DNA of 55,578 bases, from assembly GCA_000320545.1 (NCBI GenBank), contig ADNK01000404.1, positions 1-55,578 of the forward strand, given 5' to 3'. Below, one piece after another: positions 1-55,578 of the stretch. A program made the translations under genes and the position numbers. The notes below the pieces were generated by a model that worked only from the letters and a program-made list of their open reading frames with translations, did not search any database and had not been told where the DNA came from. Source of the DNA: Bigelowiella natans CCMP2755 (taxonomy: Eukaryota > Protista > Cercozoa). Each line of letters begins with the position of its first letter. Position 1 is the first letter of the stretch.

Positions 1-719
1 GCAGCAGTGACAACGGAATGAGATCATCTTCAGCGAAAGTTTGCTCCAGAATGCTCGTGGTAGATGAAGGAAAAGAAGAGGAGAATGGGGGGGGAGGCGG
101 GCTAGAAGTTAGAGGCGACAGCGACGATGGTTGCGACGTGAAGGAAACTAAACATCGTGGTCTTCGTGCCCCCCACCACTCGACCCCATCTCTCCTCGAC
201 GGCGAAAGCAGGAAAGGGGAGGAGGGGGAGGAGGAGGAGGACCGGGAGAGTCAAAGTTTTTTTCTCAATCGTACGGCAAGATTGGTAGTAGCCCCCATCG
301 TCATCATCATCGTCATCATCATCATCGTCGTCGTCGTCGTCGTCGTAGTAGTATTGATTAAACTTGTTTGTTTTGTTAATGAAGGTTTGGGAGGTACTCA
401 GTTATCCCTTCTTGGTTGCGCAGGTAGGAGCTAGCCCGTCCTCCCCCCCCCCTCCCCCCCCCGTTGGTGGTGTTTCTCTCGATCGAATTTGTCCTTTTTT
501 TTTTTAATAAATCGCTCTCTCTCTTTCTCTCTCTCTTTCTCTTTCTCTTTCTCTTTCTCTTTCTCTCTCTCTTTTCCTCTGCGTAATTCTTCTTCCCCAT
601 CATCATCATCATCATCATCACCACCACCACCTCTATAATCAATCTTGCCCGTTATCCTAGGACCTCCTCATGTCCGTGCTCTACCCCGAGCCGATGAACC
701 TCGTAGACTTGGTAAATAC

Positions 720-753
<34 letters not shown>

Positions 754-903
754 AAATATATTATACATTACTTAATATCACGCGTTCTGCACGTGAGCAG
801 ATCCCAAATTGACGATGTGGCGGTGGTTATGTTGTCGTGATCTATTAGGCGTATACGGTGCTGGTGGCGCTTGCACTGAGCGCTATTATCCGAAGTGAGT
901 CGT

Positions 904-934
<31 letters not shown>

Positions 935-1272
935 CTAGCAGTTGCGGTAGTGATATATTCGTAGCAGCCGAGCTGCTGCTGATGTGTGCGGAGAAGTGGG
1001 GTTCTGAGGGAAGCCATATGGTGCGGAAAGCCAAGTGTTTTTGCCCTTTGCTGTTGTCAATCCCATATCAGATTTTTTTTTGGGTGTTAGAATTGGAACG
1101 ATATTTTGGTCTGCTACACACTGATGCCTGTTTGCCGCCTCCCCCCCCCTCCCACGCCCTTCTTCTTCTTCTTCAACCTAAAAAATAGACGTGTGGCCGA
1201 TTATATACTATGACTACCTGTTCCCCGTGCAGCCTCTACCGCTTCCAACGCAGGTGGTCTACAGGAAAATGA

Positions 1273-1308
<36 letters not shown>

Positions 1309-1317
1309 TATAATACA

Positions 1318-1357
<40 letters not shown>

Positions 1358-1957
1358 ATGTATATATTTACACGAATATTTCATCGAGAAACCGATCGAA
1401 GGTTGTGCATATCTCGTTACGTGCTCCTTGCCTCTTCCTGACGGTACCAATGCAATTCTAATCGAAGGCCGAGGTGGAGGCGTTCTTGGTGTACGCCGAC
1501 TCCAATGACAACGGGATGATCTCGCGCAAGGAGGCCCTCAGGTAGGATTGAGCGCGGCGCGTCTTTTATGCTGATGACGGTGACGGTGACGATGACGATT
1601 TCCCCCTCTTCCTTTTTTTTTTTTTCTCTTCTTGCCACCGTTTGCCGTCCTCTAGTCTGTTCGGCGAGATGGACAAATTTATACGAATGGCGGAGATTGA
1701 GACCTTGTGGTAGGAGGAGTAGGAGTAGTAGTAGTAGGAGTATCAGTAATAGTAGAAGAAGTAGTGTAAGTGGTCGTAGTAGGATGAGGCGCCTGATAGC
1801 CTTACACACAGCTTCCATGCACAGATGATGCTACACACATATCCGTAAAACACAGATATATGACGTGCTACGCATAGGATTTGTGTGGGGGGGGGAGGGG
1901 GGGAGCTGCGTGTGCGTGCGTGTGTGCGTACGAGCGAGCGAGCGCATAACACTACGA

Positions 1958-1992
<35 letters not shown>

Positions 1993-2363
1993 CAATTTCA
2001 ATAATATATAATACATTGATGTACATTTGATGTGCGTAATCTACTCTCATCACCACCATCACGAATAAGGTATACGGTAGAGAAGGCCTTCAAGCGCATG
2101 TTCGAAGGTCTTTCAGCATCACCACACTAGTTTCTATGAGAGAAGGGGGGAGGGGGAGGAATGATCGATGATGTGTGCATGTAGTGCTTCCTATCATATG
2201 CAGCGGCGAAGGCAAATACGTCAATCGTATTGCCCTCAATGTCACTCTCTTCCCCCCCCCCTCCAACCCCCTCCCCAATTGAAAAGAGGAAGAGCGATGT
2301 GGGTACGAAGAAGCTGAGGAGATATTAGAGGTCTAATATGCATCTTTTCTTGTTCATTACGAG

Positions 2364-2403
<40 letters not shown>

Positions 2404-3564
2404 ATATTGTTGTGTGTGAGTGTGAGTGTGAGTGTGTGTATATGTTGTGCGTAGTATACCATGTGTACATGTTGTTTATTCTTCTTCCTCTATTTCTTCT
2501 TCTTCTTCTTCAGGACCTCTCGCTCTTCGACTACCACAATGATTGGCGCGAGCGCTACGATTTCGCGGATAAGTGGGGGGACGGCGACGGTAGCGAGCGT
2601 ACGCGCACAAGCATAGCTGTTTCATTGATTCGAGTTAACGAGGATGGTGCTGCCGATTTGCAGCTCATCATCCGAAGCAGCCCGCCTCCCCTGCTCTTGT
2701 TGATTGATGATGGTTGCACTCAGGCACGCTGGATGTGGAGGAAATGCTTATTATGGTATTGCCGGATATTGTTCCAAGGTAGTGGTGTTGATGGTGATGA
2801 TGGAAGAAGAAGAAGAAGAAGAAGAAGAAGAAGAAGAAGAAGAAGCGAGAAAGCAGCACTGCAGAGTTGGCTTCATTTCTTCGTATGTTCAGTAGAATAG
2901 CATCACACACAAAACAACACGTTCTCTAGCCACCATCACCACCACCACCACCACCACCACCGTATATTCTATACCCTCCGCAGCACTCGGGGCAAATGGT
3001 GGCGGGAATACGAGTTCCCCCTACTGGACAAGAACAGGAATGGCAGGGCGAGCTGGGAGGAGTACCTTGCGCACATGGAGGCATATCATGCGATGGAAGA
3101 GGAAGGCCTTGCTCTGGTAGTAGCTCACAACCCTGATACTCGTCGTATCGTGTACTACTAGTTGTCGTAGTAGTGGAGATAGCAGCAGCAGCAGCAGTAG
3201 TAGTCATTGAATACAACAACCACTAACGTTATCACCCTCACTGACGAGATTCTATAGAAAGAGAGAGAGGGGGGGGGGGGGGGGGGGATAGGAATGAGCC
3301 ACAGAAATGCATGCTGCCTTTGGTCATTACAGCCCAAGCCCTAGCTTCCGCGCATGATGTTTACTCAATCTTCACAGGATGCAATGAAAGAGCAGAAGAT
3401 GTTGTGGTTTTACTACGATGTGGACGCTGATAGGGAGCTGACACCAAATGAGTAGGATGATGCTTCATTTTCGGCCAGAATAAATGATGATGTTGCTTCA
3501 ATACACACGGAGAGAATCTACGCCTTGCAACTGCGGTGTTACGCGTGCTCTTGTTTTCTATATA

Positions 3565-3607
<43 letters not shown>

Positions 3608-4019
3608 TTCTCCTCTCTCCCTCCCCCCTCCGAATCATTACCATCTCACATATCATCATTATCATCATCAACAACAATAACGAAAACAGGTTTGTATCAT
3701 TCTTGCAATCCCAATGGGCCTTCATACGTACGGAGGAGATGTTTAAGCTAGGGGATTTGGTAGTAGTAGTCGTCGTCGTCGTCGTAATAGTAGTAGTAGT
3801 AGTAGTAGTAGTAGTAGCAGGACACAAAAATATCGGCGGATGTTGGAGGGAGGACTTCAAGTAGAAGAAGGAAGGATGAGGAAGAACATTTACTTATGCG
3901 TCCCCCTCTCAATACACATATAAGACTAAATTTCTGATGCTAACTTGCTGCTCCTTACTTTCTGCTTGCTGGATGCCTCGAACATTGTAGAAATAAAACA
4001 CACGACGACGACGACGACG

Positions 4020-4054
<35 letters not shown>

Positions 4055-4260
4055 AACAATAACGTATCTTACAGAACGAGGACGAACAAATATCGAAGAA
4101 AGAGACCCTCGAAGGGCTATCACACTTCAAGAAAACCATTCACCAATTCGGGCGCATGAAACAGCGCCGGCGCCACAACAACGCTAAAGATAGTAGCAGA
4201 AGCAAAAGCGGCAGCAGTAAAGAACAGCAGCCACACGACAGCGTGGAGGATCCGGAGTAA
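1..4260 (+). CDS. CREC (calumenin/reticulocalbin)-like multi-EF-hand Ca-binding protein, multi-exon, 5' end outside window
   Basis: GT-AG spliced exons give EF-hand loops DSNDNGMISRKE (~1490-1535), DKWGDGDGTLDVEE (2570-2745), DKNRNGRASWEEY (~3025-3065), DVDADRELTPNE (~3420-3450) and DL|NEDEQISKKE (intron 3760-4074). Stop TAA at 4258-4260. Loop spacing resembles CREC proteins. Some internal exons are uncertain. Confidence 0.75.
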
Positions 4261-4615
4261 GGCAAACGTCATCACCCTCAGAAACTGATGAATCCTGTCA
4301 TCGCAACCAATATAAGTCGAAATCTAGCGGTTGAAAATAGAATCAAGGAAAGGGTGTAGCGCTCCCTCATATGTATGGAATGAACCGTGTTCTAAAATAT
4401 GATACTACACACAAACCTAACGATATGTATACACACGTCCGATGCATGCATCATCTAGGAATACGTATTGCAGCTACACAATTCGTATTGCTCTTATATG
4501 CAAATTCATGTGCGCAGCTTACCCGCACGTACTGAACGGTAGCTAGCTAAACAACACATTCGCTAGATAGAAGCTGGTGCAAATGTAGATTTAATATATT
4601 GTCAGCGTAAGTGGC

Positions 4616-4703
<88 letters not shown>

Positions 4704-5331
4704 ATCTTCTCTTATTCTCCTCCCAGAGTATGTTTTGTGTGCATAAATAGAGGCGATAGCGAGCCGATCGAGAGAGAGAGAGAGAGAGAGAATCGAAACA
4801 TATATGATAGCAAGATTGTAGCATCTACTGCGCTGACAGGAGGGGTTAGCTGCTAGCCAAAGCAAAAAAGCTAATTGGAGAATGTGCAGATTCAACATTA
4901 GCGCTGTAGCGCTGTAGCCTCTTCATTGCGATGCGCAGCTACATGAGGATGACCATTGAACAAATTAATTGATTCATTACATCCGTCTTACAATGTGATG
5001 CAGCGTGCACATCTAGACATCTTTGATGCTTTTAAATTCATGAAGAACGTAATAGCAGAGACAAATGACACAACATAAACGCTCTAGCTGCTGTTTTGCA
5101 CAGTTACATTAGGAGGACGACCATTACAAATATATATTTAATCACTTCATTACATTCCTCTCACATCTAGACATACACATCATGAGCGCTGTAGCTGCCG
5201 CTCTGCATAGCTACATTAGGATAACAATTAAAAATGTGATCATTTCATTACATCCGTATCATATATGAACTCGCAACCGGCGCGGGCACCATTAGTGCTA
5301 GCGTGCGTTGTTTGCCACTTGCGTACTGAAA
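4261..5331. other. Convergent spacer rich in palindromic words, with three copies of an ~85-bp repeat
   Basis: GTAGCTAGCTA at ~4539, ATGCATGCAT, TCTAGA and AGCGCT. Lies between the 3' ends of a + gene and a - gene. Confidence 0.75.
4908..5268 (+). repeat. Three near-tandem copies (~4908-4992, ~5080-5171, ~5184-5268) of a dispersed ~85-bp repeat
   Basis: Shared consensus AGCGCTSTAGC..GC..TGCAYAGCTACATTAGGATGACCATTGAA-(AT-rich)-TTCATTACATCCGTCTCACAT is visible in all three copies. Confidence 0.85.
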
Positions 5332-6081
5332 TTAGTTTGCCTTTTGCATTCTCCATACTTGCACATTGCTCGGCACGATTCTAGAATCTACTTCATTAAG
5401 CTCATGTGATACCTGTACGATCTCATCTCCAGTCTCCGACACCGATATGCTTCCGACAATGAGCACTTGCCCCGACGTGCTATTCACTTCACGGAACAAT
5501 ACGGTGTTTGGAGGAATTTCAGACATGATGAAGTGAATGGGCCCGTTGCTTCCTTCGGGTGGATCCAGGCGGAATGGAGCACTCTCTCCATTCCCAACGC
5601 CGCTCATGGAAATTTTTCGTTCGACACCGGAGGGAAGGATCACGGAACTCGTAAGGATGCATCGGCCCCCCTCTAATTTACATTGCGTCGTCCCGTTTAA
5701 GACAAGCGGCGTTGCTGAAAGATCAGCTTGGGCGTATCGCATAAAACCGCTATAGAGAATACCATCGATCTTCCTCAGCACGGGAAATGGTGGCGAAGCT
5801 TCCTCGTTTTCTCCTTCAACACGCGCACAGCAAGTAACAGCATCTCCTGAGGTTAGACGTCGTCTTTGTTTTTGTTGGATTATTTTGGGTGCCGTTCTAG
5901 AGCTTAGAGCAGGTTTACAGAATGGTTGGACAAATTTGCTATTGGTGGGAATCCGTAGCCCATTAGTTCTCAAATTAGGCCGGGACGGTCTCACTCTTGG
6001 TCGCGGAGCAGCGCTAATTACTTCGAAAACGAACAGGGATGCGAAGATAAAACAGACTGTGGCAGTCCCTAGTTGCTGCAT
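5332..6081 (-). CDS. Uncharacterised 249-aa protein with a bipartite leader (signal peptide + transit-like peptide), probably plastid-targeted
   Basis: Intronless ATG-to-TAA ORF. Hydrophobic TVCFIFASLFVFEVISA is followed by an Arg/Pro/Ser-rich, acid-poor stretch ending near VTCCA|R, then a globular, beta-rich-looking mature part. Confidence 0.8.
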   Translation of the reverse strand: MQQLGTATVCFIFASLFVFEVISAAPRPRVRPSRPNLRTNGLRIPTNSKFVQPFCKPALSSRTAPKIIQQKQRRRLTSGDAVTCCARVEGENEEASPPFPVLRKIDGILYSGFMRYAQADLSATPLVLNGTTQCKLEGGRCILTSSVILPSGVERKISMSGVGNGESAPFRLDPPEGSNGPIHFIMSEIPPNTVLFREVNSTSGQVLIVGSISVSETGDEIVQVSHELNEVDSRIVPSNVQVWRMQKAN

Positions 6082-6300: not shown

Positions 6301-6913
6301 ATGTTGTCGCGAGGAAGAAAACCTTCCCATTCCCATCGATACGACAAGGAAATATCGACCCCCTCGGTTCCTCAGGTTAGCCCTACGTCGGAAGCTCTCT
6401 TCGGGTGTTGGGTGGGACAGGAGCAGCGACAGAACTGATGATGATGAACACGGCCCATTTGCAAGCGAAGGGTGCAAGATGATGCCAGCATATGCCTCCG
6501 GCACCTCCTCCAGCCTGAATCAAGGCAGGGAGGGTAGCAGTCCGGGGAATGGTTCGCGCCAAGTGCAGGTTCCAAATTACTTATTGCATTAACCATAATT
6601 TTGAGCCGTGTTTCCGTTGATGTCGAGATAATTGTGTGTAGATTCTAAGATCCCGGGTTGAAAAGAAAGGAGCTTCGATTGAAAAGACTGTGCAACGAAA
6701 GAGAAAGCTGTACACGTCGAGGGGGGTCAAGAAGGATGAGGTAACCTTATCCGCACCCCCCCCCCCCCCCTTCTCTCTCCCTGGTCTCAATCATTTGATC
6801 TATCCTATTTCTCTCTTATTGAGGATCTGGGATTTAAGCTCCTGTTCCCCCCTTCCCACCTCCCCCTACCAAAGAGAGCAGACGAATAGAACTAATATAA
6901 TTATTCAACTTTT

Positions 6914-6956
<43 letters not shown>

Positions 6957-8581
6957 TTTTGATACATCAGATCATTATTGCCATTCCATACGAATGTTGC
7001 ATTAATTCTGATATGGGACGCAGAACGCGATTGGGGAAGCTCATCGCGGAAAAGAGTCTAATACTGAACAAGGAATTCGAGGACCAGATCTACCTTGCGT
7101 TAGTCTATCTGGAAGAAAAGCACAAGCCGGCATCCAACTACAGGGCGCAGTACTTCCAGGGATATCCTACGGAGAGAGACGTATTTCCTGTGTTTTGGCC
7201 GGAGAGCTGCCGGAAATGGCTTCGAGGTTCGTCGATGCAGGCATCAATCGAAGGACTGATTGAATGCATGGAGAGCGAGTATGCCACCCTCCTTAGAGCT
7301 TGCAACGACGGTTCTTTCGCGCGCAGCTGCAGTCTCGCCGACTACACGTGGGCTCGGATGATGGTAACCAGCCGAGCATTTCGGCTGACAATAGGAGGGA
7401 AAGTACAGCGGGTTCTCAGCCCTATCGCCGATATGATGGACCACGCCGAAGAGCGGTGGACAACGTGGCAATACGACGAGGAGCTCAAGGCGCTCACGGT
7501 TGTTGCTCTGGAGGACCGTCCAGCTGGTCAAGAGATTCAATGCCACTACGGCAAGAAATCGGCCAAAAGTTTCTTGCTCTACTATGGATTCTCGCCGTCT
7601 GAGAGTTTACTTTTGAATGGCCGGGGAAGAGACCGCACTAACTTACTGCGGAACAGTCTGCGCTACCCTCACCTCAATGACGTACATTTTGTTATGTTCA
7701 TCCATCCGGACTTCCCGGAGGCTAAACAGAAGCAAGAACTTGTGAACGACAAGTACAAATGCAAAAAGTATGCTATCAGTGCCGACTTCTCATGCAAGAA
7801 GTCCCTCGAGGCGTTGTCCTTTATGCGGCTGCTGCAGGCTGAGGGGGAGGAGGAACTAGCATTGTTACCCAAAATGGGCCCTAATTACGACCTCGAGGCC
7901 TCACCTATAATGCCCCTAACGTTGTGCAATGAAATTAAAACTCTTGAGATGTTGAAGAATCTGTTCGAAGAGCAGAAGTCCGGATACGTTGAAAGTGGGA
8001 GCGAGGAAGACGACGACAGCTGCTGTGGTGAAACCAAAGAAGAGGCGGAGGAAGAGAGGGAGAAGGACGGGGAAGCGAACAGTAAGGGCCAAGTGTCGAA
8101 GGAAAAACGGGGGAAGCAAGAGATGACTCATAAGAAAGATGGAGAGGGGAGGGATTTTGAGGAATGGAATAGGAATCAGCTGAAGAGTGGTCAGAAAAGG
8201 AAGATCCATCACGTGCAGGCGAGGGAGGAGCCTGAGAACCGGGATGAAGAAGAAGAGAAGAAGAGACGAAAGACTAAGAATGAGGAGGAGATAATAGGCG
8301 ATAGAGGGAAAAAGTTAAAATTAGACCCAAAAAGGAGACCCCGAAAAGAAGAAAGCAGGGAGGGGGGACCAGAGCAAAAGGGAAATAAGCTGTCGACTTT
8401 AGATAAGGGGCTATCGAGAAGGAACTGCTCGATCATTGTCAAGGGCGAGCAAATAGTTTGTGATTTCTATATTAGTCTGGTGAATGCGCTGCTTCCCATC
8501 ATAAAGAAAGGCGTTTTCATGGAGAGACCAGTGGACATGGCAGGCCTCCCAGGTACAACAGCAACATCATCGTATGTGTAA
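6301..8581 (+). CDS. SET-domain methyltransferase, SETD3/SETD4/Rubisco-LSMT-like
   Basis: Exon RKLYTSRGVKKDE splices to IIIAIP. Motifs YTWARMMVTSRAF, LSPIADMMDH and GQEIQCHYGKKS..FLLYYGF are followed by an LSMT-like substrate-binding region. Start uncertain (ATG 6301 or 6479). Confidence 0.85.
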
Positions 8582-9957
8582 TGGTAGTGCACCTGCTGAT
8601 AACAATGATAAGACAACGACTATTTGAAACAGTGACCACGGTTCCTATTCGAGTGGTAGTTTGATCTGACGAGATTGCTACTATTCACAGAATGTGTCTC
8701 TGATTACCTGGCATACTTATGGTATTCATTGACGATGCGAAGAGAGGGGCAAGAAGAGATAGGCGAATAATCAAGCCGCTTGCTGAATTATTTATAAGTA
8801 GTATGCTATGCTGGGCACAAGTATATTCTTTGCACACACACGCCCATGCATGTCCAATTCTTATAAGGTAACACCGATCGTGTAAGGCCATCGCATCGAT
8901 TTATGAATAACAAACTGTATGCATGCCATTATAATTATAGAAGAGGAAGCACAGTTGCGCGACCAGGCGGGCTAGCGGGGCATCTGACATGTGCATGCAA
9001 TGGCCAAAGTGGCTTGCTGGGTCACTGCATCGATCGGAATGCGTCAATGAGTCACAGCTAGCTAGCTAGGCATCTATCTATGCTTGTATGATGAATGACT
9101 TCTACTGCTGCGCATGCTAATGCTATATATGCTATGTGTTCGCAATGATGCTAAAAATAACGCAGATCTACGTAGCTAGTAGCTAGGTAGCCTAGATGCA
9201 TACATCTAGTGTCTATATATATGTGACTTCATGTAATGCATTTTTGGCGTAGTGCCTAACTAGCTAACAAGGCTAACCATGCACAGCTAGACAGCTAGCT
9301 AGATCGAGAGACGCTAGAGACGTTACATCGATTTAGCATACATTTAGCCTCAGATCGCAAATTAGAAATGTATACTCTTATTACGCATGATCACAGATTA
9401 GTTATGACTACTATCATGTTTAAAGCTTGTAGGATTGAAGGCGTCGATAGCTATCCTTTCCCACATATATGTAAGCTAATAAGCTGACTGCCGTGACATG
9501 TAGCAGTACTAGGAACATTGTGTAGCACCAAGTCAGACGCTCACTTATGGGCATAAATGTAAATGCATACGCTACATACATACTACAATTTATGCATGCG
9601 ACTTCTTCTTTTCAATCGCCTTTATTTAAGTTGAGTTGACGGTCATGCGTGTCATTGACGGTGCTAAGATGGTGCGTGTTGCTACCACGTTTACCATTAT
9701 TGGGACTAACTAATGCGGGACTAAAAACCATTCAGAGTAAACATCTGTACATGCGGTGAGTAGTGGAATTAATCACATGTACAACGCATGGAATGTACAT
9801 ATGTGTATGTACACATTTGGGGGGGGGGGGGGAGGAGGAGAATCTTACGATGACTCCATCTCAGAGACATTCGTAAGAAAGCGGGTGAGAAAATAGAACG
9901 GTCGTAATTAAAAAACCGTGGTCCTCAGATCCTGGTTCTCGAGTCGCTGATTTGATT
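8582..9957. other. Convergent spacer rich in palindromic words
   Basis: CAGCTAGCTAGCTAGG at ~9056, GTAGCTAGTAGCTAGGTAGCCTAG at ~9172 and ACAGCTAGCTAGATCGA at ~9291, plus many TGCA/CATG words. Confidence 0.75.
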
Positions 9958-11743: not shown

Positions 11744-12488
11744 CTTGGAAACCTGTCTAAACAGAAACAGGTTAATTAATGTCTATCCATACTTTCGGGC
11801 CTAGAGTAGTTCCTATAATGTCTTCTTAAGAGAGGTTACCTCCTGGATGGCTAGCTTGTCAACACCTATGAAACGACAGCTTTCCCAGTCCAAGGTGAGT
11901 CTCTAGGGGAAGGAGCTTTCTCCTGAGCAGCGATTCGGCTAGCCGAAGACGTGTTGTGCAGTACGAGAAGACGATTTAAGTCTTTTCACTGCACACCTGG
12001 GAAAGAATACGACGCTATTTTACATTAAAACGGTCTTAATAGATGTCGTATCATATATTCGTGAGGATATTTTACAGATATATCCAGCATGGAAGTAGAT
12101 TGCTGTTCGGGCTCATTTGGTACCCTCGATTAAACGGCAAACGCAACCTGTTTCTGCTCTTTTCGAGACGTCAATGTTGAGAAATTCGGCGTCAGCGCCA
12201 CTGCGAAATTCTCACAAAAGTGTTTCTGTGGCAAATAATCCTCATCAATATCCCCTTACGACTCAAGATCTTTGTAGTCGTATTGTAATTTACGAAATTT
12301 CGATGAATTTTCTGCCTGTATTACAACAGAAGGTGCAACTCCTTGTTGTCGTACCTCAAAGATAGATTGGTTTTCTATATTAATAATTAATACTTGTATT
12401 CGTACAATCCGACTTCATGATATCATTGTCGTAGGATGAAACGGGTGATCATCATCTGAAGCTTGTCGCAAAATTTTCACGAACATCA

Positions 12489-13099
12489 ATGGCGTCTCGG
12501 GCCGGTCGGAAAGGCTCGAAGAGCAAAAAGAAATGGACGAGCAGACCAAGTCTTTAAATGCCTCGAATCTCACTTGTTATGTATCTACTATGGCGTGCAT
12601 GTTTTCCCAATTACAGCTTAAACTTCACATTCCATGCAAATGCCATGCAAATCAGCAATGCTGAAATTCTTTTCTCGGATTCTCCGGCCTTTGCGTTCGC
12701 CAGGATATAATAAGAGAAAGATGGAGGTCAGATTTGATGAAGATGATCGAAGGTGAATGGGCTAAAATGCTAGCTGTAATATAATTTAAAATCATTTTTA
12801 TCATTATTATCATTTTGTGAGCAATGTACTGCCGTTGCCAGGGAGTTTCTCACGGGGTTTCACAAGCGAAAACAACAACGGCGGGAAAAGGCAAATAAAA
12901 AAGCTGCAGAGAAGGAAAAATCTGATAGACGTCAGCGGAGGAAGGAGGTTACTCATCTCTTTGTCACATGCAAACTGAACAACAGCTAGTTCGCGCAGGG
13001 TCGTATGATCTACGTGCTTACCACCACTGCATTTTGTAAATGTCTTCCTTAGAGAAGATCACACCAACGTATTATAAATTTACTGGTTGCCTTCCCCCC

Positions 13100-13187
<88 letters not shown>

Positions 13188-13453: not shown

Positions 13454-13523
<70 letters not shown>

Positions 13524-15471: not shown

Positions 15472-15514
<43 letters not shown>

Positions 15515-38125: not shown

Positions 38126-38177
<52 letters not shown>

Positions 38178-39322: not shown

Positions 39323-39353
<31 letters not shown>

Positions 39354-39427: not shown

Positions 39428-39471
<44 letters not shown>

Positions 39472-46038: not shown

Positions 46039-46836
46039 GGCTCTATGCATTGAAAGCACAAAGTGAGCCGAGTAATGGCATTGAAATGACACGTTCGAAA
46101 GTGCAACTAAAATCAATATTTCTGGAATAAAATTGAGATTCGCAGAAACAAGTAGACATAACATGAGCGCTATAGCCGCTCGCTGCTTTGCATAGCTACA
46201 TTGGGATGACCATCAAAATGATTTAATCGTTTTATCACACGCTAGCACGCTGCATTTCACATAGCTAGATAGCTACGTAAGGATGATCATTGAACAAATT
46301 TAATTGATTAATCACATCCGTCTTACATCTGTCTCATATCTCTAGCGCTAGCTAGCTAGAGCTCGCATGTGAAACGGATGCAATGAACATTCTTTTTTTT
46401 TATGGTCATCCTAATGTGTAGCTACGCTGCATACGAAATCAAAACAGAAACGAACAAACACAATTCAAGCTCGCATGCACATGTCATCTTGTTCACACTG
46501 TAGACTGATGGCCATGCTAGCATGTGCAGCCGAGCTGCCATGTGATCATATACATGCACATTTGTGTTAAATTCATTGCATCCGTCTCACATTTGTCACG
46601 CAACTGTGCGCGTCTTTGCTATTCTGTCTGTCCGCTACGCTTGCAGCATCACAAAGGCCATACATTTGTTCAAAGTTTACTTTCAGCTAAATCTTAATTT
46701 TTAAATGTTATATGGTATGTGATACAATGCTTTCGTTTACTCCCAAAATACCCAATGACATAAATGTTATATTCGAATACTTTAAGAGCGATACTGCTGT
46801 GAACAACAAGAAAGAATGTAGTCGGAATCCAATAAA
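46039..46836. other. Convergent spacer rich in palindromic words, with repeat copies
   Basis: TCTAGCGCTAGCTAGCTAGA at 46341-46360 and CATGCTAGCATG at ~46513. Confidence 0.8.
46164..46595. repeat. Cluster of the ~85-bp repeat: + copies ~46164-46240 and ~46241-46340, inverted copy ~46367-46432, partial copy ~46570-46595
   Basis: GCATAGCTACATTGGGATGACCATC; AGCTACGTAAGGATGATCATTGAACAAATTTAATTGATTAATCACATCCGTCTTACA; and on the opposite strand ACGGATGCAATGAA...ATGGTCATCCTAATG. Confidence 0.85.
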
Positions 46837-46940
46837 TTATGTCATTGCAGCTGCTCTTCTTCCAGCGCCATCGTTATCACCGTCAATTTCCTTGCAGTAT
46901 GCACATGCCTGTTGAAAATAGATAAATTTTATATCTATAA

Positions 46941-46978
<38 letters not shown>

Positions 46979-49900
46979 GTATATATATATACATCCACAT
47001 ACATCTTCAAAATACTACCGTGAGCATCCTCTTATACATGATGTCTACGCTTGAGTATTCAGGAAGCTCCAATTGGAAGAAACACGTATGCGCAATCTGT
47101 CGAGATACATTTCAAAAGATTATTCAATGAGAGGTTCACCAGTCACATCGCGTCGATTATGTTAATATCACTTACCGGAAGGAAGTCGTCCGGTTTCCTC
47201 CCGCCCGCGTACGCTTTCGGGCATGCTAGGAGCTCGAAATTTCTCTCGAACCCGCCCTTGTTCGGGGGGAGGCGTGTGCGCCCCCACGCGAAGAAGATGA
47301 CCTGAGACCTCTCCTCATTCGACATCCGCTCCATCATCTGCCAGAAGTACTTGATGTGCGGCGAGGAGTTGTTGTACCACTTGCCGTTTCTCCCCTTCCC
47401 TTTCACACTCGTCTTGGACTTGAGGAGCTTGAGATCGATCTCAACCTTTCCGCAGACCTGATCCCTGAGATCGGACCATTTGAACAGGCTCAGAATCTGG
47501 TAGGGAACGACGGTCGCGAGGCCCCTCAGCATCGCCTTTCCATGCTCGTCGAACTCCTTCGTCCGCAACTTGGTCAGAGTCTCGATGTACCGGTGGCGAG
47601 TTTTCCAGGTTATGGAGATGTCGCGCCCCCCGGGTATGAGCTCCACTATCTTCCCATCCGCCAGACATCCCTCGAACTTGACGGTCTTCATCTGCGTGTC
47701 AAACTGCTTCTCGTCCATATTCTTCGTTGACTCCGCCATCAGAGTCATCATCTTCCCAACCCACGAATCGATGTCGATCACGTCTTTCAGCGAAACGTCC
47801 TCGGAGACCATGGGCTTCCACACAATGGCCGGGAGGTTGAGGGCCATGTAATTCGTGGTACGGATCGCAAGCCCCATCATCTGCCCTAGGAACTCGTACA
47901 TTCGTATCATCATCTGCTTCTCCTTCGGGTACAGCCCTCGCATCGATTTCGGTACGAACATCTCCCTGTTTTTGCCCGTCGCCTCCCTCGCATTCGGGCA
48001 TTGGATGAAGAGCGGGAGGGAGCTGGATTGGATCTCCTCCGCCATTTTGAAGAAGAGCTCCCTGTACGGACCCCCCACGTCGTGGGAGTGGCAGCCTTTG
48101 AATATTGTGGTGAAGGCGCGGTTATTGGGCTCGATACGGTAGAACTCCCCATTCTTTTTGTTCCTCTCGAGCTCCCTCATCAGCTGGGCAAACATAGTCT
48201 CGGTTCCCTCCCAATCCGTCTTCTTCTGCTCTCGCACAGTCGCGGCCTTGAAAACGGAGATATTGCACTTCGTAGCGGAGGTGTTGGAGCTGTGGGAGGT
48301 CTTGTTCAGTGCCGCCTGCCACATCTGCTCCTTCGTCCCCCAGAAGATGAAAGGCTTCGCAGATTTGACCAAATCCGTCAACCGGGAAACGTTAGAAGCT
48401 AGGGAGAGATTCACCAGAGGCAGCACATCCTTGATTATCTTGTTGAAGTACCTCAGGCAAATATATCGATCTCGCTTCTCGGCCTCGGTGATGTTCTCGG
48501 CATAGAGATTGGTGTAGAGGAGCTTCTCACGGGGCTTGCCGACGAGCAGCTTGGCATCTATGAACGGGTCGCGCCTCTTCGCAGCGACTTCTCGGTGGCT
48601 GTCCCTCTCATCAATCAGCATCACCAGCTCGCTGTCAGAGGCGTGGGTGAACTTTGTATTATTGGTTTTCTCAATGGCAGACTTGTTGAAGGCCTTTGCA
48701 TCTCTTATGGCCTTGAGAAGGAAGGCAGCAGGCAATCTCCGTTGGTTCTGCCCTCCCGATGGATGCGACCTAGAGAGCACCTCCATGACCTCGCAGGCCA
48801 GTGTGAGGTCTTTGAACCACGTGGGATGGCTGCTCTTCCTCTCGCTCGGGTCGGTGAGAAGCACAAGGTTCATGTTGAGATCGATCATCGACTGGAGGTA
48901 CGGAGAAGCATGCTTGCTGGCCTTGTTCGCGCCGACGCACTGTTTGTTGTACGCCCGCCCCATCATATCCGAGAATATCTTGACCTTGGTCTGCGACAAG
49001 GAGACGTAGAAACCCGCCGGTGTGACCTTTGCAAGGGAAGAGAACAGGGTCATCGCTTCGTTCCTGGCCTGGCCTTTAGTCCCGTGTACCAGCTCGAGCA
49101 TGACATCCCACAGCTGAGGGGGGAACAGTCGCTTGTAGTACCTCGCGGGGGAGGCTGAAGAACCCCACCCCCCACTCATATTCTCGACGAATGCGATCAC
49201 ACCCACGAACATGCTCTTGATCCAGTTGGCCATGAACAGAGATTGCCGCTCGAGGGAGGCCACCGGCTTCTTCTTGATGATGGGGTTCAGCATTCTTAGC
49301 ACGCTCCCAACGAGGTACGAGGAGAGGGTTCCCGTTAGAGGACTCGCAGCGGCGTTGCTCGTCGCCACGTTTTGGGCCTCTTTGCGGAGCAGGTTTGAGA
49401 AGGGGGCCGAGAAGTCTTCGAAGCCAGATCCGTCTTTAATGAGACTCGACATGAGCGCGCCGATGGTGCCATCGTTTATCATGGACTGCAGCACGCTGCT
49501 GTCGTCCATCCCAAGGTTCGATAGGAAGACCGTGGCCCCACGCCTTGCATAGGAGGCCGCGAGCGCCCTCTCCACACCGATTCGCATCTTCAGGTACTTC
49601 TTTCTGCTCAGGCGACCGAGTGCAGCGATGGAATACGCCCTTTGATTGATATCCGAATCCGCCTCGACGAACAAGTCCTCCCCCTCGGGAACGTCCTCAT
49701 CCGCCGTTGCCGCCACTTTCGTGTCCGCCGATTTATTGTCCTGGAACGTCATTTGCTCCCCGGGGAAGTTGAGGATGTGGATGCGGGGGTCAGAGGAGAG
49801 GGGATTCTCGTTTGCCTGCCCAGCCACGGTTTCAAACCCCTTGGAAGTCCACCTGTCTTTCGAGATAAGCTCAGTGACGGCACTGAAGAACCCATTGGTG

Positions 49901-52900
49901 GAAATAGCCCCGCGAATCTCCCCTTTATTATCAGACATGCATTGGAAGAGCTTCACGTCCTCGTCGTTTCCTGTGAAGTTGTCCTCGGTCAGCGTCGTTT
50001 TCCCCGAAAGCTTCGCCTCCTCCTCATCGGCTTTCCCTGCCAAGATGTAGTCCATCGCCGCCTGGATCTTCCAATTGCACGCCTTGAGAGCGACATAACC
50101 CTTGATGCGACTGAATCCCATGCACAAGATTGTGGAGAGCTCCTCCGCGTGCTTCGCCGCGATCTCAGGCGGAATGATATCCCCTTCTGTGTGAGTCTCT
50201 GAGAGTTCCAGCTTGCTTTCTGAGGGGGCAGGGACGGGGATGGATTCTAGCAGAAGAGACTTGTGCTCTAGACCGGCCACGGATTCAGTCGTCAGGGTGC
50301 CGTCGGCGTACTTGAGCAAAGTGGCCATCATATTGCGCTTCTTGAATTCCTCCTTGAACTCATCGTCGTCGACCAGCTCGCTGATGATCTTCAGCACGCG
50401 CCTTTGTAGCGAGAAGAAGTGCACGATTCCAGCTTGCACCTTCTCGAGGTTCCGAGGGCACTTGAGCTGCAGGACGAAAGAGAGGATCTCCATCATCTCT
50501 TCCTTGTTTTTCATGAACTTGAAGGGGAGCTCCAGGTCGGGGAGTGCACAGACGTCGCCAATCGGCATGTTGGCGTGCAGCTGGCCGTCGTCCATGGTGA
50601 TGGTCAAGGTGACACGATCAGGCATTGGTAAGTCCAAGCTCCCCTCGTGCACCATGTTGGATATGTGACCCACCTCCAACTCGCCCGTCACGCCCTTGAA
50701 CTTCACCTTGCCCCCCTCTCTGATCCTGTATATGGTACCCCCCAGCACGGTAAGAGCGGCGTATACTCTCTCCAGCCTCAGCTCCAGAGCTCTCGCTGCC
50801 TTGGTGTCGTCTGTCTGGTTTTTGACGAGGATTTCGGCGGTCGTTTCGAGCTGTTCTATGGTAGGTTTGATCTCCCGGAGCCCGTAGATGATGAGGTCCT
50901 CAACTCGTGACTTCCAGGTGTCGGAAGTCAACGAGCCCTGTGCGGCGAGTTGCTTGTTCTCTTTCGTGTCCTCGATCTTCGCTCTCACGATGCAGCCGTC
51001 GTACAACCGAAAATCACTGAGAACGCCGCTCTTGAGCGGCTTGAAGCCGAACATTAGCGTCAGTCCGGAGGGGTCCGCCTCAACCATCTCCGCCGTCTTG
51101 ACTTTCAGTCCCCAGACGGTGTCGCCCAGGTACGCCTGCACGCTGACCTGCTGTTGGTGGAATCTACCCATCATCTCAATGCACACCGTGATCGGGGCGA
51201 GCAGGGAGCGGAAGATGTACGTCAAGTCCTCCACGACCGAGGAGGAGGCTTGCGACGATTCAAGGTCCCGACGAAGATCGAGCAGCTTCCTGTGAGAAAC
51301 CACCGACTCCCAGGTTTTCAGGGGGGTATTCAGCTTTTTGGTCACGCCGCCGCGACTGTTATGGGCGAGCCTTGTGAATGGCAGCGGCAGAGAAAACACA
51401 CCGATACGATAGAACATGTACTCCAAATCGTTGGACAGGGTGCTCATGGAATGGAACTCGGCGGCGGAGGACTGCTGTAGCAAGGCGGGGGAGATCGGGG
51501 TGAGTTTGAGGACCTTCCTGAAGATCCTGGCGACCAGCTGTTGGGCTAGCTGGACTAGTTGGATGACTTCTTTGCCGTACCCGTGATGCTCTGAGGTAGT
51601 GTAGAACACACGTGAGAGCAAAGAGATCCAGCATTTTTGGGACAGTTCTCGCTGTCCTTCCTCTTTCGTCGCGCAGCGCAGCAAGATCCAAAGATACTGG
51701 TTCACCGCGGCCAGGAGATACATCTTGATATCGTTCCGACTGGGCGTCGACCGTGACTTCCCTCTCGTGCATTGCAAGTCAAACCAGCAAATTGGCGCGT
51801 CCGCGAGGGACTGCTCGCTGGTGCTACCGACGACTTCAAAAAACTTAGCAGGCAATGCTCCGCTAGTCCGAGGGGCAAAATTAAATGCGTTGAACATTGC
51901 TCTAATCTGTGAAAAGATGATATCCATGACGGAATTTCGGAGAATGTACATGTCGGTCTCGTTGTCCCCGGTGACGTTGTTAAACTCGACACTTCCCTCT
52001 TTTGCTGCTTCTTTTTTGCTCAAGAAGGAAAAGTAGGTGATGAGACGGAACATGTTCCACGCGGAGGCACTCACATTGAAGCTAGTCTCCCGTCCTCTCT
52101 GAAAAAGGGAATAGTAAGGGAGCTTCTTGTGCAGGTGATCGACGATCGCAGTCTTGACCAGCCCACTCGCATCAAGTTCTCCATAGTTAAGGTTCAGTGA
52201 CCCGGTGAGCTGGAGCCAGAACTTCGGTTCTGCAGTCGCTTTCTTGTTCCGCAACAAGCTCGAGATCACGTCGTAGTAGAGAAAGCTTAGCACTTTGGAG
52301 TCCTCGGACCCACAGCACTTGAGGTTCATCAGGTAGTGGGTCAGCCTTGCGGTAGGAGTTCCCTTTTCGGAATCGCCCGTCTTGCCAACGAATGTGTTTG
52401 TCTTGCTGACGAGCATCAGGTTGGAAGGCTTGAAGTTCTTTAGGGTTTCAGTGTTATTACCATCCCAATCGCCCTTGACAGGGTATCTTCCACTCGCCAA
52501 CATATACCCTGTAATCTCTCCCTGTCGCCCGTTAAATCTCTTGGACTTGATAAGTCCTTGCACCACTACTCTATCACCGATGAGGAGCTTGGAAGTATTA
52601 ACGAAAGGGTTCACGTTTAAGAGGGCTAAAGACTTTCGAGCTTTCGCTTCCTGGATTTTCTTAAAATTCTTTGGCACTACTGGAGGGGACTTCAGAGGCA
52701 GCAAGTCGTCCAGGGTAACATATCGTTTAGAACCCTTCAATTTTGGGCCTTCGACCTGTATTTGGACTCTAAAATTTGACATTGAATTGGAGATGATGTG
52801 TCCATAATATCCAGTAGCTCGGCACTTAATCCACATCGATTTCATGGTATATTTATGCTCAAGTAGGTTTTCCCTCTTGAAATTCGCTTCACCATGATGG

Positions 52901-55542
52901 TGGCTATACTTGAGCTTTTGGCGGCCATTAGCAAATCCATGGGTTTTTATTCGGCCCAGTCTTCCGTTTAACTGTTTTGCATTTACCAGTCGGCGGACGT
53001 AACAACGTGTATGTATAGGGACCGCGCCGATTAGGGTTAAGACTTCAACAGGCTGTGGCTTCGGGGCTGCTCGATCCCGAACAATAACGTTCGGCCCACC
53101 TCTTGAGTGAAGTTGTAGAGCCCGTACTGAACCCGGAGTAAACATCCTGGCGAACTGCGCCGCAAAAAGCAGCAATTCATCTCCTGGGCCGGCCCCTCCA
53201 CCTGCCAGCGAGTACTGAGAAAGGATGCTTCCCAATTCACGGACCAGAACCAAAGCTGCAATGCGGTAGGTCGCCCGGATGCGTTGTCGGACTAGGCACT
53301 CACACAGCTCTCGTCCCAAGTCCCGTTCCCCTTTGGTGTTGATGAACTCAACCACCCTCCCCGCAAGGGTGTAGGCCGCGTCGATCTTCTGCTTCATCAG
53401 TCTCTTCCGGAGGGAGACCATATCCCTCAGCCTGCGGGTCACCTGGCCGGCCGCCCTAAGCTTGAAGATGGCCTTGACCTTCCTCCACTTGGAGTTGGGC
53501 TTGAGCTTCGTGACTTGTTTAGGATTCATGATGTTAACCACTGCCTGGTCGTACTCCGGTTCCTTCAGACTCGATAGCCGGGATAGGGGGGTGGTAGAGA
53601 GAATGGTCTCCAAAGATGACCCGGCGGAGGAACCTTCTCCGCCTGAGTTTGTTGATATGGCAGGGTCCACGAGTAAGAGAAACCTGCAGCGCTTTATAAC
53701 TTTCGCAAGGTAGGTTTTGAGGCTGCCGTAGTTCTTTATGGTGTCTTGGTCGTCATTGCGGAGCCTTTGGCAGATGAGGGCGATGTTGAAGGCCTGCGTC
53801 CAGAGAGTCATCAGGGGCTGGGGGGGTTTGCCGCCCTTCGGTGGGGTTGTGGAGGCCTCCTCGGCCATAGGTACCAGGTGGCAATGGTGCAGCATCACCG
53901 CAAGGACTGCGCAAACTGCATTCTCGGTTGCCTTACCTCCGTGTTGGTTTCGGACCATCTTCATCCGTCGCTTCTTCTGTATCAGCTTTATGAGCTTCGC
54001 GGCCTTCCCGCGTTTATGGAACACGTCCCCGAGGAACGAAGACTCCCAGTCTTGGGGGATCTTCCGCGGGGGTAGTGTGTACTGCCAGCTTTCTAGCTTT
54101 GTGCTAAGATCGACGAACTCTTCGCAGAGCTCTGGACACCAGGACCATACGCTCACAGCGGCATTTTGGGATGCTGCTTTCAGCTTAATGTCCTCCGTGG
54201 TAATGCCGCGGAGCTTCACGTCAGCATCTTTGAGCTGCTTTACGTCTTCAGAGCCTCCTCGAGGTGTGTCAGGATAGGAGGTGTCGCGTGACGTCATGCT
54301 AATATGAATCCCGCCAGACAGTAGCCCCGATTCCAACCACCATTTGTTCTTTATTTCGATGAACGAGTGCTTTTGTTTGGCGACGATCCCGTTCAGAATG
54401 GTGCAGCACAGGTTCGTGATCAAGAGTGGGAGTTGATGCGACTTTGCCTTTCCCTTTCCGTCAAAGATCTTCAGATATGCGTTGTCAAGACTAATAAAGT
54501 GGGGCAGGATCCGAAGCGCAACGCTCGGCAGTACGATTAGTCCAGGCGTCAACGAGTTCATGCCAGATATCAGCACTTTCAAAACCTTAAACAGGGGTAA
54601 CGACATGGCAGATTTCGACTCCAGCCTCTGCAACATGGTACTACTTCTCGTCGAGCTGACCTTACTCAAAGCCTTGCAGAAAGATGTAGCAAGCTTTAGT
54701 ATCTGCTCGCATAACTCGAAGAAACCCTCAAACTTCTCAGCGTCCCGGCCTTCGATCTTGTCCACACCATAGGCCACCGACCTATTGAGGATGGGCTTGA
54801 GAAGGGCAACAGAAGAACATATGTACTTCAACGTGAACTCTTGGCTCGCCTTCTCCACTGATTCTAAAAGCTTCGTTTCGCGCATATCCATGGGAAGAAA
54901 CGTAGGCTTTTCCGCCAGCGGAACGAGCTGCCGCCACGTATATAGTCCAATTGTAAAGATTTGATTACGCCAGAACTTCGATTGGCTTCCCGCCATGGCG
55001 AGCACCCCTCCCCTTTTCTTCTCTTCCATTTGCTGCTTTCGGCTCTTCAGGGACCTCGGGTCGTGGATGGTCTGGCAGTAGCCCACTTTCATATACTCTA
55101 TCTTCTTCAAATCGGAAAGCGAGAAGGCGAACCGCACGGAACCGCCTGCGCCACAAGACACGGCAGGAACCACGCTATCGAAGTCGCCCATGCTGACCAC
55201 TCGGTGCAGCACCAGCTCCCCGTCGTAGTAGAAATCCATGTGCATCTTGTGCTGCTTCCTGTTCTGATCCCATCTCTCGAACAGGATCTCACAGCCGAGG
55301 GTGGGGTGCTCAGAGGATGAGGAGCGTCTGTTTTTGCGCTCCTGCCCCAAGACCTTCTTCCCGTCGTGCCACAGATTGAACTCGGAGTCCAACCCGTACC
55401 CCTGCGAGTCTGACCCGAGACCAGGAATAGCGTCGAGGTTGACTTTTGCGGTGCCGCCTCTCAGGCTGTACCAGCCAACCCGCACGTCCACATTTCTCAG
55501 CACATGGACTTCGTAGTACCATCGCCCCATACCCAGAGAAGC
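46837..55542 (-). CDS. Giant HERC-type HECT E3 ubiquitin ligase (SPRY, KOW/SH3-like repeats, ubiquitin-like, UBA, HECT); 5' part outside window
   Basis: One 8367-nt exon (55542-47176) carries GRWYYEV..VRVGW (SPRY), DTVWGLKVK..LTLMFGFKPL..LSDF (Ubl), MGFSR..ALKACNWKIQAAMDYIL (UBA), DVGGPYRE and YEFLGQMMGLAIR. Two short exons add LP|IAHTCFFQLELPEYSS with the catalytic Cys. Stop TAA at 46837-46839. Confidence 0.95.
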
Positions 55543-55578
55543 CTGGAGCAAGTTATAGGAGGCGAGGGGGGGGGGGGG

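What the first reader, a model, noticed from the sequence alone, without database searches (positions are those of the whole stretch)
1..55578. Sixteen consecutive genes in perfectly alternating orientation
Seen: the 16 reconstructed genes run +,-,+,-,... with no tandem (head-to-tail) junction in 55 kb. Under random orientation the chance is (1/2)^15, about 3e-5. Most head-to-head spacers are ~0.2-0.75 kb (e.g. 6082-6300, 23068-23452, 36635-37066, 43044-43326; one is ~1.1 kb). Tail-to-tail spacers are 0.6-1.4 kb. Inference: the chromosome is built from modules, each a bidirectional promoter driving two genes and bounded by shared convergent end zones. This is the opposite of the unidirectional gene blocks known in kinetoplastids.
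Basis: partly seen in the sequence, partly recalled or inferred. Interest (0 to 1): 0.85.

Follow-up and report, generated by a model that had tools for sequence, protein, structure and literature searches.

The report
Genes alternate strand one by one
In this 55-kb piece of the alga Bigelowiella natans, nearly every gene points the opposite way from its neighbours, so gene starts share short gaps and gene ends share longer, scar-filled gaps. This is far stronger than the bias known in brown algae, but two of the 16 genes could not be verified.

Summary
The window is a whole contig (C3333) of the Bigelowiella natans nuclear genome. They form two unbroken alternating chains, genes 2-8 and 10-16, giving 12 strand switches at 12 junctions (p = 2.4e-4 if orientation were random). 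Genes 1 and 9 lie in microsatellite-rich DNA and stay unverified.

The alternation is not an artefact of merging same-strand genes. There are 16 strand blocks in 55.6 kb, or 3.5 kb per block, against a published 4.36 kb per gene. Single families fill whole blocks.

An independent marker agrees. CTAG words and NNNN-CTAG-NNNN scars are concentrated in all eight tail-to-tail spacers (35 of 37 scars) and are absent from head-to-head spacers. Contig C2720 repeats the pattern.

From 250 kb I can bracket the switch rate only between about 74% and 95%. Bidirectional promoters are inferred, not shown. The scan had already found this layout on other pieces of this genome. I found no paper describing it.

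The parts
1..4260 (+).
   Evidence: Only weak '+' coding segments at 2546-2667, 2974-3056 and 4070-4256, with two weak '-' segments at 993-1564. No Pfam hit. Microsatellite-rich.
4261..5331 (.). T1, tail-to-tail spacer
   Evidence: 9 CTAG, 2 duplicated-flank scars
5332..6081 (-). B2, single-exon 249-aa ORF with a signal-peptide-like N-terminus
6301..8581 (+). B3, gene with a 540-aa terminal ORF and a weak Rubisco-LSMT substrate-binding match
8582..9957 (.). T2, tail-to-tail spacer
   Evidence: 14 CTAG, 5 scars
9958..11760 (-). B4, unknown protein with 312-aa and 108-aa ORFs
   Evidence: four '-' coding segments, none '+'
12456..14120 (+). B5, Nop25/NOL12-like nucleolar protein
   Evidence: PF09805 6.9e-11 on exon 12780-12986; '+' segments
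14121..15381 (.). T3, tail-to-tail spacer
   Evidence: 20 CTAG, 8 scars
15382..16596 (-). B6, KDEL receptor (ERD2), 9 exons
   Evidence: Exon-by-exon reading; PF00810 4.8e-5 on 15532-15729
17296..21441 (+). B7, large Rab/Roc-type GTPase gene
   Evidence: Ras/Roc P-loop at 19407-19604. The upstream 168-codon ORF 18908-19411 abuts it with no spacer. '+' segments throughout.
21442..22242 (.). T4, tail-to-tail spacer
   Evidence: 31 CTAG, 9 scars
22243..23067 (-). B8, unknown small gene (ends approximate)
   Evidence: '-' coding segments 22782-23149, best score 20.6; no Pfam hit
23453..28400 (+).
   Evidence: ATG ORF 23453-23593 ending at GTAAGT. One '+' segment at 23854-23935. 24.7-28.4 kb is compound microsatellite. 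No Pfam hit in 15 '+' pieces.
28401..29172 (.). T5, tail-type CTAG zone next to the 3' end of B10
   Evidence: CTAG zone 28566-29159; the interval 28001-29172 holds 21 CTAG and 5 scars
29173..31650 (-). B10, unknown protein, 516-aa ORF plus upstream exons
32527..34652 (+). B11, unknown protein, 210-aa first ORF plus downstream exons
34653..35278 (.). T6, tail-to-tail spacer (weak)
   Evidence: 4 CTAG, 1 scar
35279..36634 (-). B12, unknown protein
   Evidence: ORFs 35282-35680 and 36064-36402; '-' segments; no Pfam hit
37067..40777 (+). B13, MnmE/TrmE GTPase
   Evidence: TrmE_N on 37527-37802 and MMR_HSR1 1.9e-13 on 39469-39795
40778..41947 (.). T7, tail-to-tail spacer
   Evidence: 8 CTAG, 1 scar
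41948..43043 (-). B14, organellar ribosomal protein L7/L12
   Evidence: PF00542 5e-10 on 42170-42454
43327..46038 (+). B15, intronless DEAD-box helicase (DDX54/DBP10 type)
   Evidence: DEAD 8.6e-46, Helicase_C 3.3e-24; DDX54/DBP10 homologues
46039..47142 (.). T8, tail-to-tail spacer
   Evidence: 7 CTAG, 4 scars
47143..55578 (-). B16, intronless HECT ubiquitin ligase of at least 2802 aa (runs off the contig end)
   Evidence: HECT 3.3e-41

Best explanation
This is a real architectural feature of the Bigelowiella natans nuclear genome. Transcription units are laid down with near-obligate alternation of strand. Every intergenic spacer is therefore one of two kinds.
- A short head-to-head spacer, about 0.2-0.9 kb between start codons, which must hold the promoters of both flanking genes.
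- A longer tail-to-tail spacer, about 0.6-1.4 kb between stop codons, which holds both 3' ends.

Shown here: the strands of 14 genes, the two spacer classes, their sizes, and the fact that CTAG insertion scars pile up only in tail spacers.

Inferred:
- Head spacers work as shared, probably bidirectional, promoter regions.
- Tandem (tail-to-head) junctions are rare because read-through from an upstream gene into a downstream promoter is selected against. With alternation, any read-through runs only into another gene's 3' end.
- Tail spacers are the one class of DNA free of regulatory constraint, so transposon footprints survive there.
For: - 12 of 12 junctions switch in the two verified chains.
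- There are 16 strand blocks in 55.6 kb (3.5 kb each), against 21,708 genes in 94.7 Mb (4.36 kb per gene; PMC13746701). That leaves about one gene per block.
- Single families span whole blocks. MnmE has its N-terminal domain and G domain 2 kb apart in B13. The KDEL receptor fills B6. B15 and B16 are single ORFs.
- CTAG runs at 13.3/kb in tail spacers against 3.3/kb in head spacers and 1.7/kb elsewhere (binomial 2.6e-41). 35 of 37 duplicated-flank scars lie in tail spacers and none in head spacers.
- On four contigs, all 14 CTAG zones that lie in a strand-flip gap lie in +->- gaps and none in -->+ gaps.
- Contig C2720 at 24.9-49 kb repeats the pattern: GH81(+) | CTAG | FtsH(-) | Aladin-like(+, weak) | CTAG | GT2(-) | ORF...RRM(+) | CTAG | long ORFs(-).
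- At least six other windows of this genome were flagged for the same thing, and two were followed up with the same verdict. These are leads, not independent proof.
Against: - Genes 1 and 9 are unverified.
- If 23.5-28.5 kb holds no '+' gene, then B8(-) and B10(-) form a tandem junction.
- The same unresolved layout recurs at least five times on C2720 and C494: the 5' end of a '-' gene, several kb of microsatellite DNA, a CTAG zone, then the 3' end of the next '-' gene. No Pfam support was found for hidden '+' genes there.
- My switch-rate estimate from 250 kb is therefore only 74-95%.
- The coding model was trained on 250 kb and has almost no power on short exons. It largely missed the KDEL receptor.
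- No TSS, poly(A) or expression data could be used.
- No promoter motif was found.
Confidence: 0.7

Rival explanations
1. Strong but imperfect alternation. The genome favours opposite-strand neighbours at about 70-80%, and this window contains at least one tail-to-head tandem junction, B8(-) to B10(-). The reader filled that junction with an imagined '+' gene in microsatellite DNA.
For: There is no detectable coding or Pfam signal in 23.9-28.5 kb. One search found no long repeat or transposon match in 23.7-27.2 kb. Five similar unresolved gaps occur on C2720 and C494. The lower bound of my estimate is 74%.
Against: - The one such gap with homology (14.1-17.3 kb) did hide an opposite-strand gene that the model missed.
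- An ATG ORF with a hydrophobic N-terminus and a GTAAGT donor starts at 23453.
- The CTAG zone at 28.57-29.16 kb is of the type otherwise seen only between convergent genes.
- Microsatellites are scarcer per kb in both spacer classes than elsewhere (1.28 and 0.84 against 2.07/kb), and the KDEL-receptor gene holds one inside an intron. A microsatellite-dense tract therefore looks more like intron than spacer.
Confidence: 0.2
2. Selection of a lucky window. The genome has only an Ectocarpus-like bias of about 60%. A perfect run was picked out because many windows were read.
For: 169 windows of this genome were read, so rare runs will be seen. My anchor-run counts on C2720, C494 and C3420 cannot by themselves tell 50% from 100%, because many genes go undetected.
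Against: - At 60%, 12 of 12 has probability 0.002 and 15 of 15 has 0.0005. Among 169 windows, fewer than one perfect run of 15 is expected, yet at least seven windows were flagged.
- The arbitrarily fetched contig C2720 shows the same pattern over 24 kb.
- CTAG zones sit in convergent rather than divergent gaps 14 to 0.
Confidence: 0.07
3. Reconstruction artefact. The reader defined a 'gene' as a run of same-strand exons, so alternation is tautological and several blocks hold two or more tandem genes.
For: B7 (4.1 kb) was described as a fusion of a coiled coil with a Rab GTPase, which could have been two genes.
Against: - Block density of 3.5 kb is already higher than the published gene density of 4.36 kb.
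- Most blocks are 1-2.5 kb, too small for two genes plus a spacer.
- In B7 the upstream ORF ends at 19411 and the P-loop ORF starts at 19407, leaving no room for a 3' end plus a promoter.
- No CTAG or scar zone lies inside any block.
Confidence: 0.03

Closest known systems
Excess of opposite-strand neighbours in Ectocarpus and other brown algae (bioRxiv 10.1101/2024.02.19.579948, read)
   Same: Adjacent genes tend to lie on opposite strands. Spacers between divergent genes are short. In Ectocarpus this goes with shared nucleosome-depleted regions at the two start sites.
   Different: The proportion there is reported as 'greater than 60%' at most. Here 12 of 12 verified junctions switch, and the 95% lower bound is 0.78. 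The organism is a rhizarian, unrelated to brown algae. Tail spacers here carry a distinctive CTAG-scar load that the paper I read does not mention for brown algae.
Bidirectional (head-to-head) gene pairs in human, Arabidopsis and yeast (e.g. PMC2648788, listed)
   Same: Two genes on opposite strands, with starts less than 1 kb apart, around a shared upstream region.
   Different: In those genomes such pairs are a minority (over 10% of human genes, per the abstracts listed). Here they appear to be the default for nearly every gene. Sharing of the promoter is untested here.
Kinetoplastid directional gene clusters (own knowledge)
   Same: The genome is partitioned by strand-switch regions of two kinds, divergent and convergent.
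   Different: There, tens to hundreds of genes share one strand between switches. Here the run length is one gene.
Very small, compact genomes, said in the brown-alga paper to show this tendency typically
   Same: A tendency towards opposite-strand neighbours.
   Different: B. natans is not compact: 94.7 Mb, about 8 introns per gene, median intergenic distance 960 bp.

Membership tests
Bidirectional (head-to-head) gene pair | Two adjacent, non-overlapping genes on opposite strands, transcribed away from each other | tested here: met
   Seven divergent junctions. Six join two genes whose strands I could support.
Bidirectional (head-to-head) gene pair | Transcription start sites no more than 1000 bp apart (definition in the PMC2648788 abstract) | tested here: inconclusive
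   Start codons are 219-876 bp apart.
Bidirectional (head-to-head) gene pair | One shared regulatory region drives both genes (co-expression, reporter tests) | not testable with these tools
   No expression data. The motif TGCGACAA in 5 of 7 head spacers is not significant after multiple testing.
Ectocarpus-type excess of alternating neighbours | Proportion of adjacent pairs on opposite strands significantly above 0.5 | tested here: met
   Window: 12 of 12 verified junctions, p = 2.4e-4. The genome-wide value is not measured; the bracket from 250 kb is 74-95%.
Ectocarpus-type excess of alternating neighbours | Spacers between divergent genes shorter than those between tandem genes | tested here: inconclusive
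   There is no verified tandem junction to compare with. Divergent spacers (median 432 bp) are shorter than convergent ones (median about 1140 bp).
Kinetoplastid-type directional gene cluster | Long runs of genes on one strand between strand-switch regions | tested here: not met
   The run length is one gene in both verified chains.
CTAG-scar convergent spacers (earlier notes of this scan) | NNNN-CTAG-NNNN with duplicated flanks, concentrated between convergent genes only | tested here: met
   35 of 37 scars lie in the 8 tail spacers and none in head spacers. Zones in flip gaps are convergent 14 to 0 on 4 contigs.

The most novel reading that the evidence does not exclude
The whole 95-Mb nuclear genome of Bigelowiella natans obeys near-obligate strand alternation, with at least 85-90% of neighbouring genes on opposite strands. 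That would be by far the strongest such bias I know of in a eukaryote, and it occurs in a genome that is not compact. It would imply that tandem junctions are removed by selection or prevented mechanistically. Two candidate mechanisms are intrinsically bidirectional promoters and termination that relies on a convergent partner.
Probability: 0.5. Interest if true: 0.85.

Novelty: new variant of a known kind. Interest (0 to 1): 0.68.

Why it matters
If the alternation holds genome-wide, B. natans would be a natural experiment on how gene orientation is constrained. Every promoter region would be shared by two genes and every terminator region by two genes. That makes three things directly testable in one organism with public RNA-seq and ChIP data:
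- co-regulation of divergent pairs;
- transcriptional interference at convergent 3' ends, including possible antisense overlap and small RNAs;
- the fate of new gene insertions.

It also has a practical side. Strand alternation and the CTAG-scar zones give a strong prior for gene finding in a genome whose splice signals are weak. It also warns that annotation pipelines may wrongly fuse or split genes here.

Tried and rejected
- RNA evidence. The look-up of sequencing runs listed about 20 transcriptome-like runs.
- Own-genome records are withheld. The look-up of encoding contigs found no record for the DEAD helicase. The search for homologous proteins gave no self hit and nothing above 48% identity. 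The blank from the search of protein representatives on the B9 ORF 23599-23760 is therefore uninformative.
- A self-trained spliced gene finder drifted to treating (GTA)n microsatellites as donors, or bridged across opposite-strand genes. I rejected it.
- An order-4 HMM overfitted. Only the leave-one-contig-out order-3 HMM was used. It has little power on short exons.
- Strand autocorrelation of HMM segments was too noisy.
- A genome-wide strand correlation from Pfam family hits (Pkinase, RRM_1) yielded only about six informative pairs and was abandoned.
- The head-spacer motif search found TGCGACAA in 5 of 7 spacers, but about 5 such 7-mers are expected by chance.
- Pfam on 15 '+' ORF pieces of the B9 region and on 10 pieces in similar gaps of other contigs gave no hits, apart from one weak CTP_transf_like match, 0.004.
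- tRNA and Rfam scans of the window found nothing.
- Spliced models were searched exon by exon, by reference only. The joined proteins were never sent to any tool.
Full report
**What the DNA is.** The window is the whole of contig C3333 (55,578 bp) of a 91.4-Mb assembly in 3,736 contigs. Earlier notes of this scan name the organism as the chlorarachniophyte alga Bigelowiella natans. GC is about 44%, rising to 55% over one giant ORF. No tRNA or Rfam RNA was found. Genes have many short introns. In the one gene I could read exon by exon, the KDEL receptor, eight introns of about 55-100 nt start with GT and end with AG. They share little else, and one holds a (GT)n run. That weakness of splice signals shaped everything that follows.

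Strands supported by long ORFs:
- B2 (-), 249 aa in one exon with a signal-peptide-like start.
- B3 (+), 540-aa ORF.
- B4 (-), 312-aa and 108-aa ORFs.
- B10 (-), 516-aa ORF.
- B11 (+), 210-aa ORF.
- B15 (+), an intronless DEAD-box helicase of the DDX54/DBP10 type.
- B16 (-), an intronless HECT ligase of at least 2802 aa.

Strands supported by Pfam hits on single exons, given by reference:
- B5 (+), Nop25, 6.9e-11.
- B6 (-), ER_lumen_recept, 4.8e-5, plus my exon-by-exon reading.
- B7 (+), Ras/Roc P-loop.
- B13 (+), TrmE_N and MMR_HSR1 (1.9e-13), i.e. MnmE.
- B14 (-), Ribosomal_L12, 5e-10.

B8 (-) and B12 (-) rest only on a leave-one-contig-out coding model. At a score of 12 or more, that model's only clear strand errors in this window were two calls, both antisense inside the GC-rich HECT ORF. 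Spliced models were never joined and sent to a tool; exons were searched one by one.

**The two weak genes.** B1 (1-4260) and B9 (23453 to about 28.4 kb) lie in dense compound microsatellites. A search of the genome with 23700-27200 found only short simple-repeat matches and no transposon. Fifteen '+' ORF pieces of the B9 region gave no Pfam hit. A search of 1.8 billion representatives with one piece gave nothing useful. That blank means little, because the organism's own proteins are hidden from the protein tools: the clear DEAD helicase had no self hit.

Three things favour B9:
- An ATG ORF of 47 codons from 23453 has a hydrophobic N-terminus and ends exactly at a canonical GTAAGT.
- There is one '+' coding segment at 23854-23935.
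- A tail-type CTAG zone sits at 28566-29159, right next to the stop codon of B10.

I put B9 at about 0.65 as a real '+' gene. 

**Is it more than chance, and is it tautological?** The supported genes form two unbroken alternating chains, B2-B8 and B10-B16, with 12 switches at 12 junctions. That has probability 2.4e-4 at random orientation and 2.2e-3 at the 60% known from Ectocarpales. The 95% lower bound on the switch probability is 0.78.

The obvious trap is that same-strand neighbours could have been merged into one 'gene', which would make alternation automatic. Four things argue against it:
- The window holds 16 strand blocks in 55.6 kb, 3.5 kb each. The published figures are 21,708 genes in 94.7 Mb, 4.36 kb per gene (PMC13746701). 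Random orientation would give about half as many blocks as genes.
- Most blocks are 1-2.5 kb, too small for two genes plus a spacer.
- Single families span whole blocks. MnmE covers 3.7 kb, the KDEL receptor covers 1.2 kb, and B15 and B16 are each one ORF.
- In the one suspicious block, B7, the upstream ORF ends at 19411 and the GTPase P-loop ORF begins at 19407. That leaves no room for a 3' end and a promoter.

**An independent marker of the two spacer classes.** Earlier notes of the scan reported CTAG-rich 'scar' DNA between convergent genes, and I tested that here. CTAG occurs at 13.3/kb in the eight tail-to-tail spacers, 3.3/kb in the seven head-to-head spacers and 1.7/kb elsewhere (binomial 2.6e-41). 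The pattern NNNN-CTAG-NNNN with identical flanks occurs 37 times, 35 of them in tail spacers, at least once in each, and never in a head spacer. No such zone lies inside a gene block.

Head spacers are 219-876 bp between start codons (median 432). Tail spacers are 626-1376 bp between stop codons (median about 1140). Microsatellites behave differently from CTAG: they are scarcer per kb in both spacer classes than in the rest of the window (1.28 and 0.84 against 2.07/kb), and one lies inside a KDEL-receptor intron.

C2720 at 24.9-49 kb shows the same layout, partly with Pfam support: GH81 (+, 2.9e-86), CTAG zone, FtsH (-, AAA 6.7e-43 and Peptidase_M41), an Aladin-like gene (+, weak), CTAG zone, a family-2 glycosyltransferase (-, 7.8e-13), a '+' ORF and an RRM exon (+), CTAG zone, long '-' ORFs.

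Over all four contigs, 14 CTAG zones lie in a gap where confident coding anchors change strand. All 14 are +->- gaps and none are -->+ (2^-14 = 6e-5).

Counting junctions:
- There are 31-35 strand flips.
- There are 13 same-strand anchor gaps of 1.2 kb or more.
- One of these is inside a single gene (B7), and one hides the KDEL receptor.
- That leaves 11 candidate tandem junctions and a lower bound of about 74% switching.
- Eight of the 13 gaps hold a CTAG zone. One is the KDEL-receptor gap. If the other seven also hide an opposite-strand gene, the rate is about 92-95%.
- I found no Pfam support for such hidden genes, so the bracket stands at 74-95%.
- C3420 and C494 also carry giant single-strand genes of 11-15 kb, which are not tandem arrays as far as I can tell.

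**How it most likely works.**

Shown:
- Near-strict alternation in this contig.
- Two chemically distinct spacer classes.

Inferred:
- Each head spacer holds the promoters of both flanking genes, probably as one nucleosome-free, bidirectionally active region, as reported for Ectocarpus divergent pairs.
- Each tail spacer holds two 3' ends. It is otherwise unconstrained, which would explain why insertion footprints survive only there.
- The likely driving force is avoidance of tail-to-head junctions, where read-through from one gene would run into the next promoter. I have no direct test of this.
- The only shared head-spacer word I found, TGCGACAA in 5 of 7, is not significant once all 7-mers are considered.

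**Comparison with what is known.** The nearest described case is the brown algae. There adjacent genes tend to lie on opposite strands, with proportions 'greater than 60%' in Ectocarpales and short divergent spacers (bioRxiv 10.1101/2024.02.19.579948). [quoted passage not shown] Head-to-head pairs with shared promoters are well known in animals, plants and yeast, but as a minority of genes. Kinetoplastids are the opposite extreme (own knowledge). Five full-text searches found no paper describing gene orientation in Bigelowiella. Curtis et al. 2012 is not held, so I cannot exclude a remark there or in its supplement.

**Earlier work of this scan.** The same layout was flagged on at least six other pieces of this genome. 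Two follow-ups reached the same verdict (s1-417407, s1-417431). So the scan found this before on other DNA. At a 60% switch rate, fewer than one window in 169 would show 15 of 15, so seven flagged windows point to a rate of about 0.8 or more. That argument rests on unchecked reconstructions.

**Verdict.** The module picture is a fair description, but 'bidirectional promoter' is an inference. It is an extreme variant of a known tendency. It is interesting because of its strength and because it occurs in a large, intron-rich genome. A one-line count on the public annotation would settle the genome-wide claim.

Noticed in passing
window 300-4900 and 24700-28400: Multi-kb tracts of compound microsatellites ((TA)n, (CA)n, (GA)n, (GTA)n and others), with 24 and 34 arrays respectively. 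This is far denser than in other genes. Microsatellites are scarcer per kb in both spacer classes than elsewhere, and one lies in a KDEL-receptor intron.
   Followed up: partly
window 15382-16596 (-): The KDEL-receptor gene has 9 exons and introns of about 55-100 nt. The donors are GTATAG, GTGCGG, GTAAGC, GTATAA, GTTAGA, GTAGCG and GTCTAG, so there is almost no consensus beyond GT..AG. This explains why ab initio gene finding failed.
   Followed up: yes
window 47143-55578 (-): An intronless HECT ligase ORF of at least 2802 aa, with a weak UBA match and 55% GC against about 44% around it. It is unusual in a genome with about 8 introns per gene.
   Followed up: no
window 43327-46038 (+): The intronless DDX54/DBP10-type helicase has no relative above 48% identity among 5.8 billion proteins, once the organism's own records are hidden.
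   Followed up: no
window 6304, 12463, 17113, 23313, 31962: TGCGACAA(C) occurs in 5 of 7 head-to-head spacers. In four of them it sits on the '-' strand close to the start of the '+' gene. It is not significant after correcting for all 7-mers, but is worth re-testing on more head spacers.
   Followed up: partly
window 20336-20380: A repeat of about 40 bp inside the intron-rich GTPase gene recurs at 90-95% identity on at least 7 other contigs.
   Followed up: no
G000:C777:86015-86758(-) and 89944-90687(+): Two protein-kinase domains with identical scores lie 3.2 kb apart in divergent orientation. This looks like a recent inverted duplication, which would create a new gene while keeping the alternation.
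   Followed up: no
L025-L026 (C3420 1.5-13.3 kb, +) and L021-L022 (C494 20.1-35.4 kb, -): Giant single-strand coding regions of 11-15 kb. The first carries a PI3K/PIKK-like catalytic motif seen by eye (SMG1/TOR type).
   Followed up: partly
L027 (C3420 23.1-26.5 kb): A possible genuine tandem (-,-) junction with a CTAG zone at 25659-26054 between weak '-' segments on the left and a '-' gene on the right. The left-hand calls are below my confidence cut-off.
   Followed up: partly
Nothing was laid, and I sent none of these letters to any search tool afterwards.
   Followed up: no
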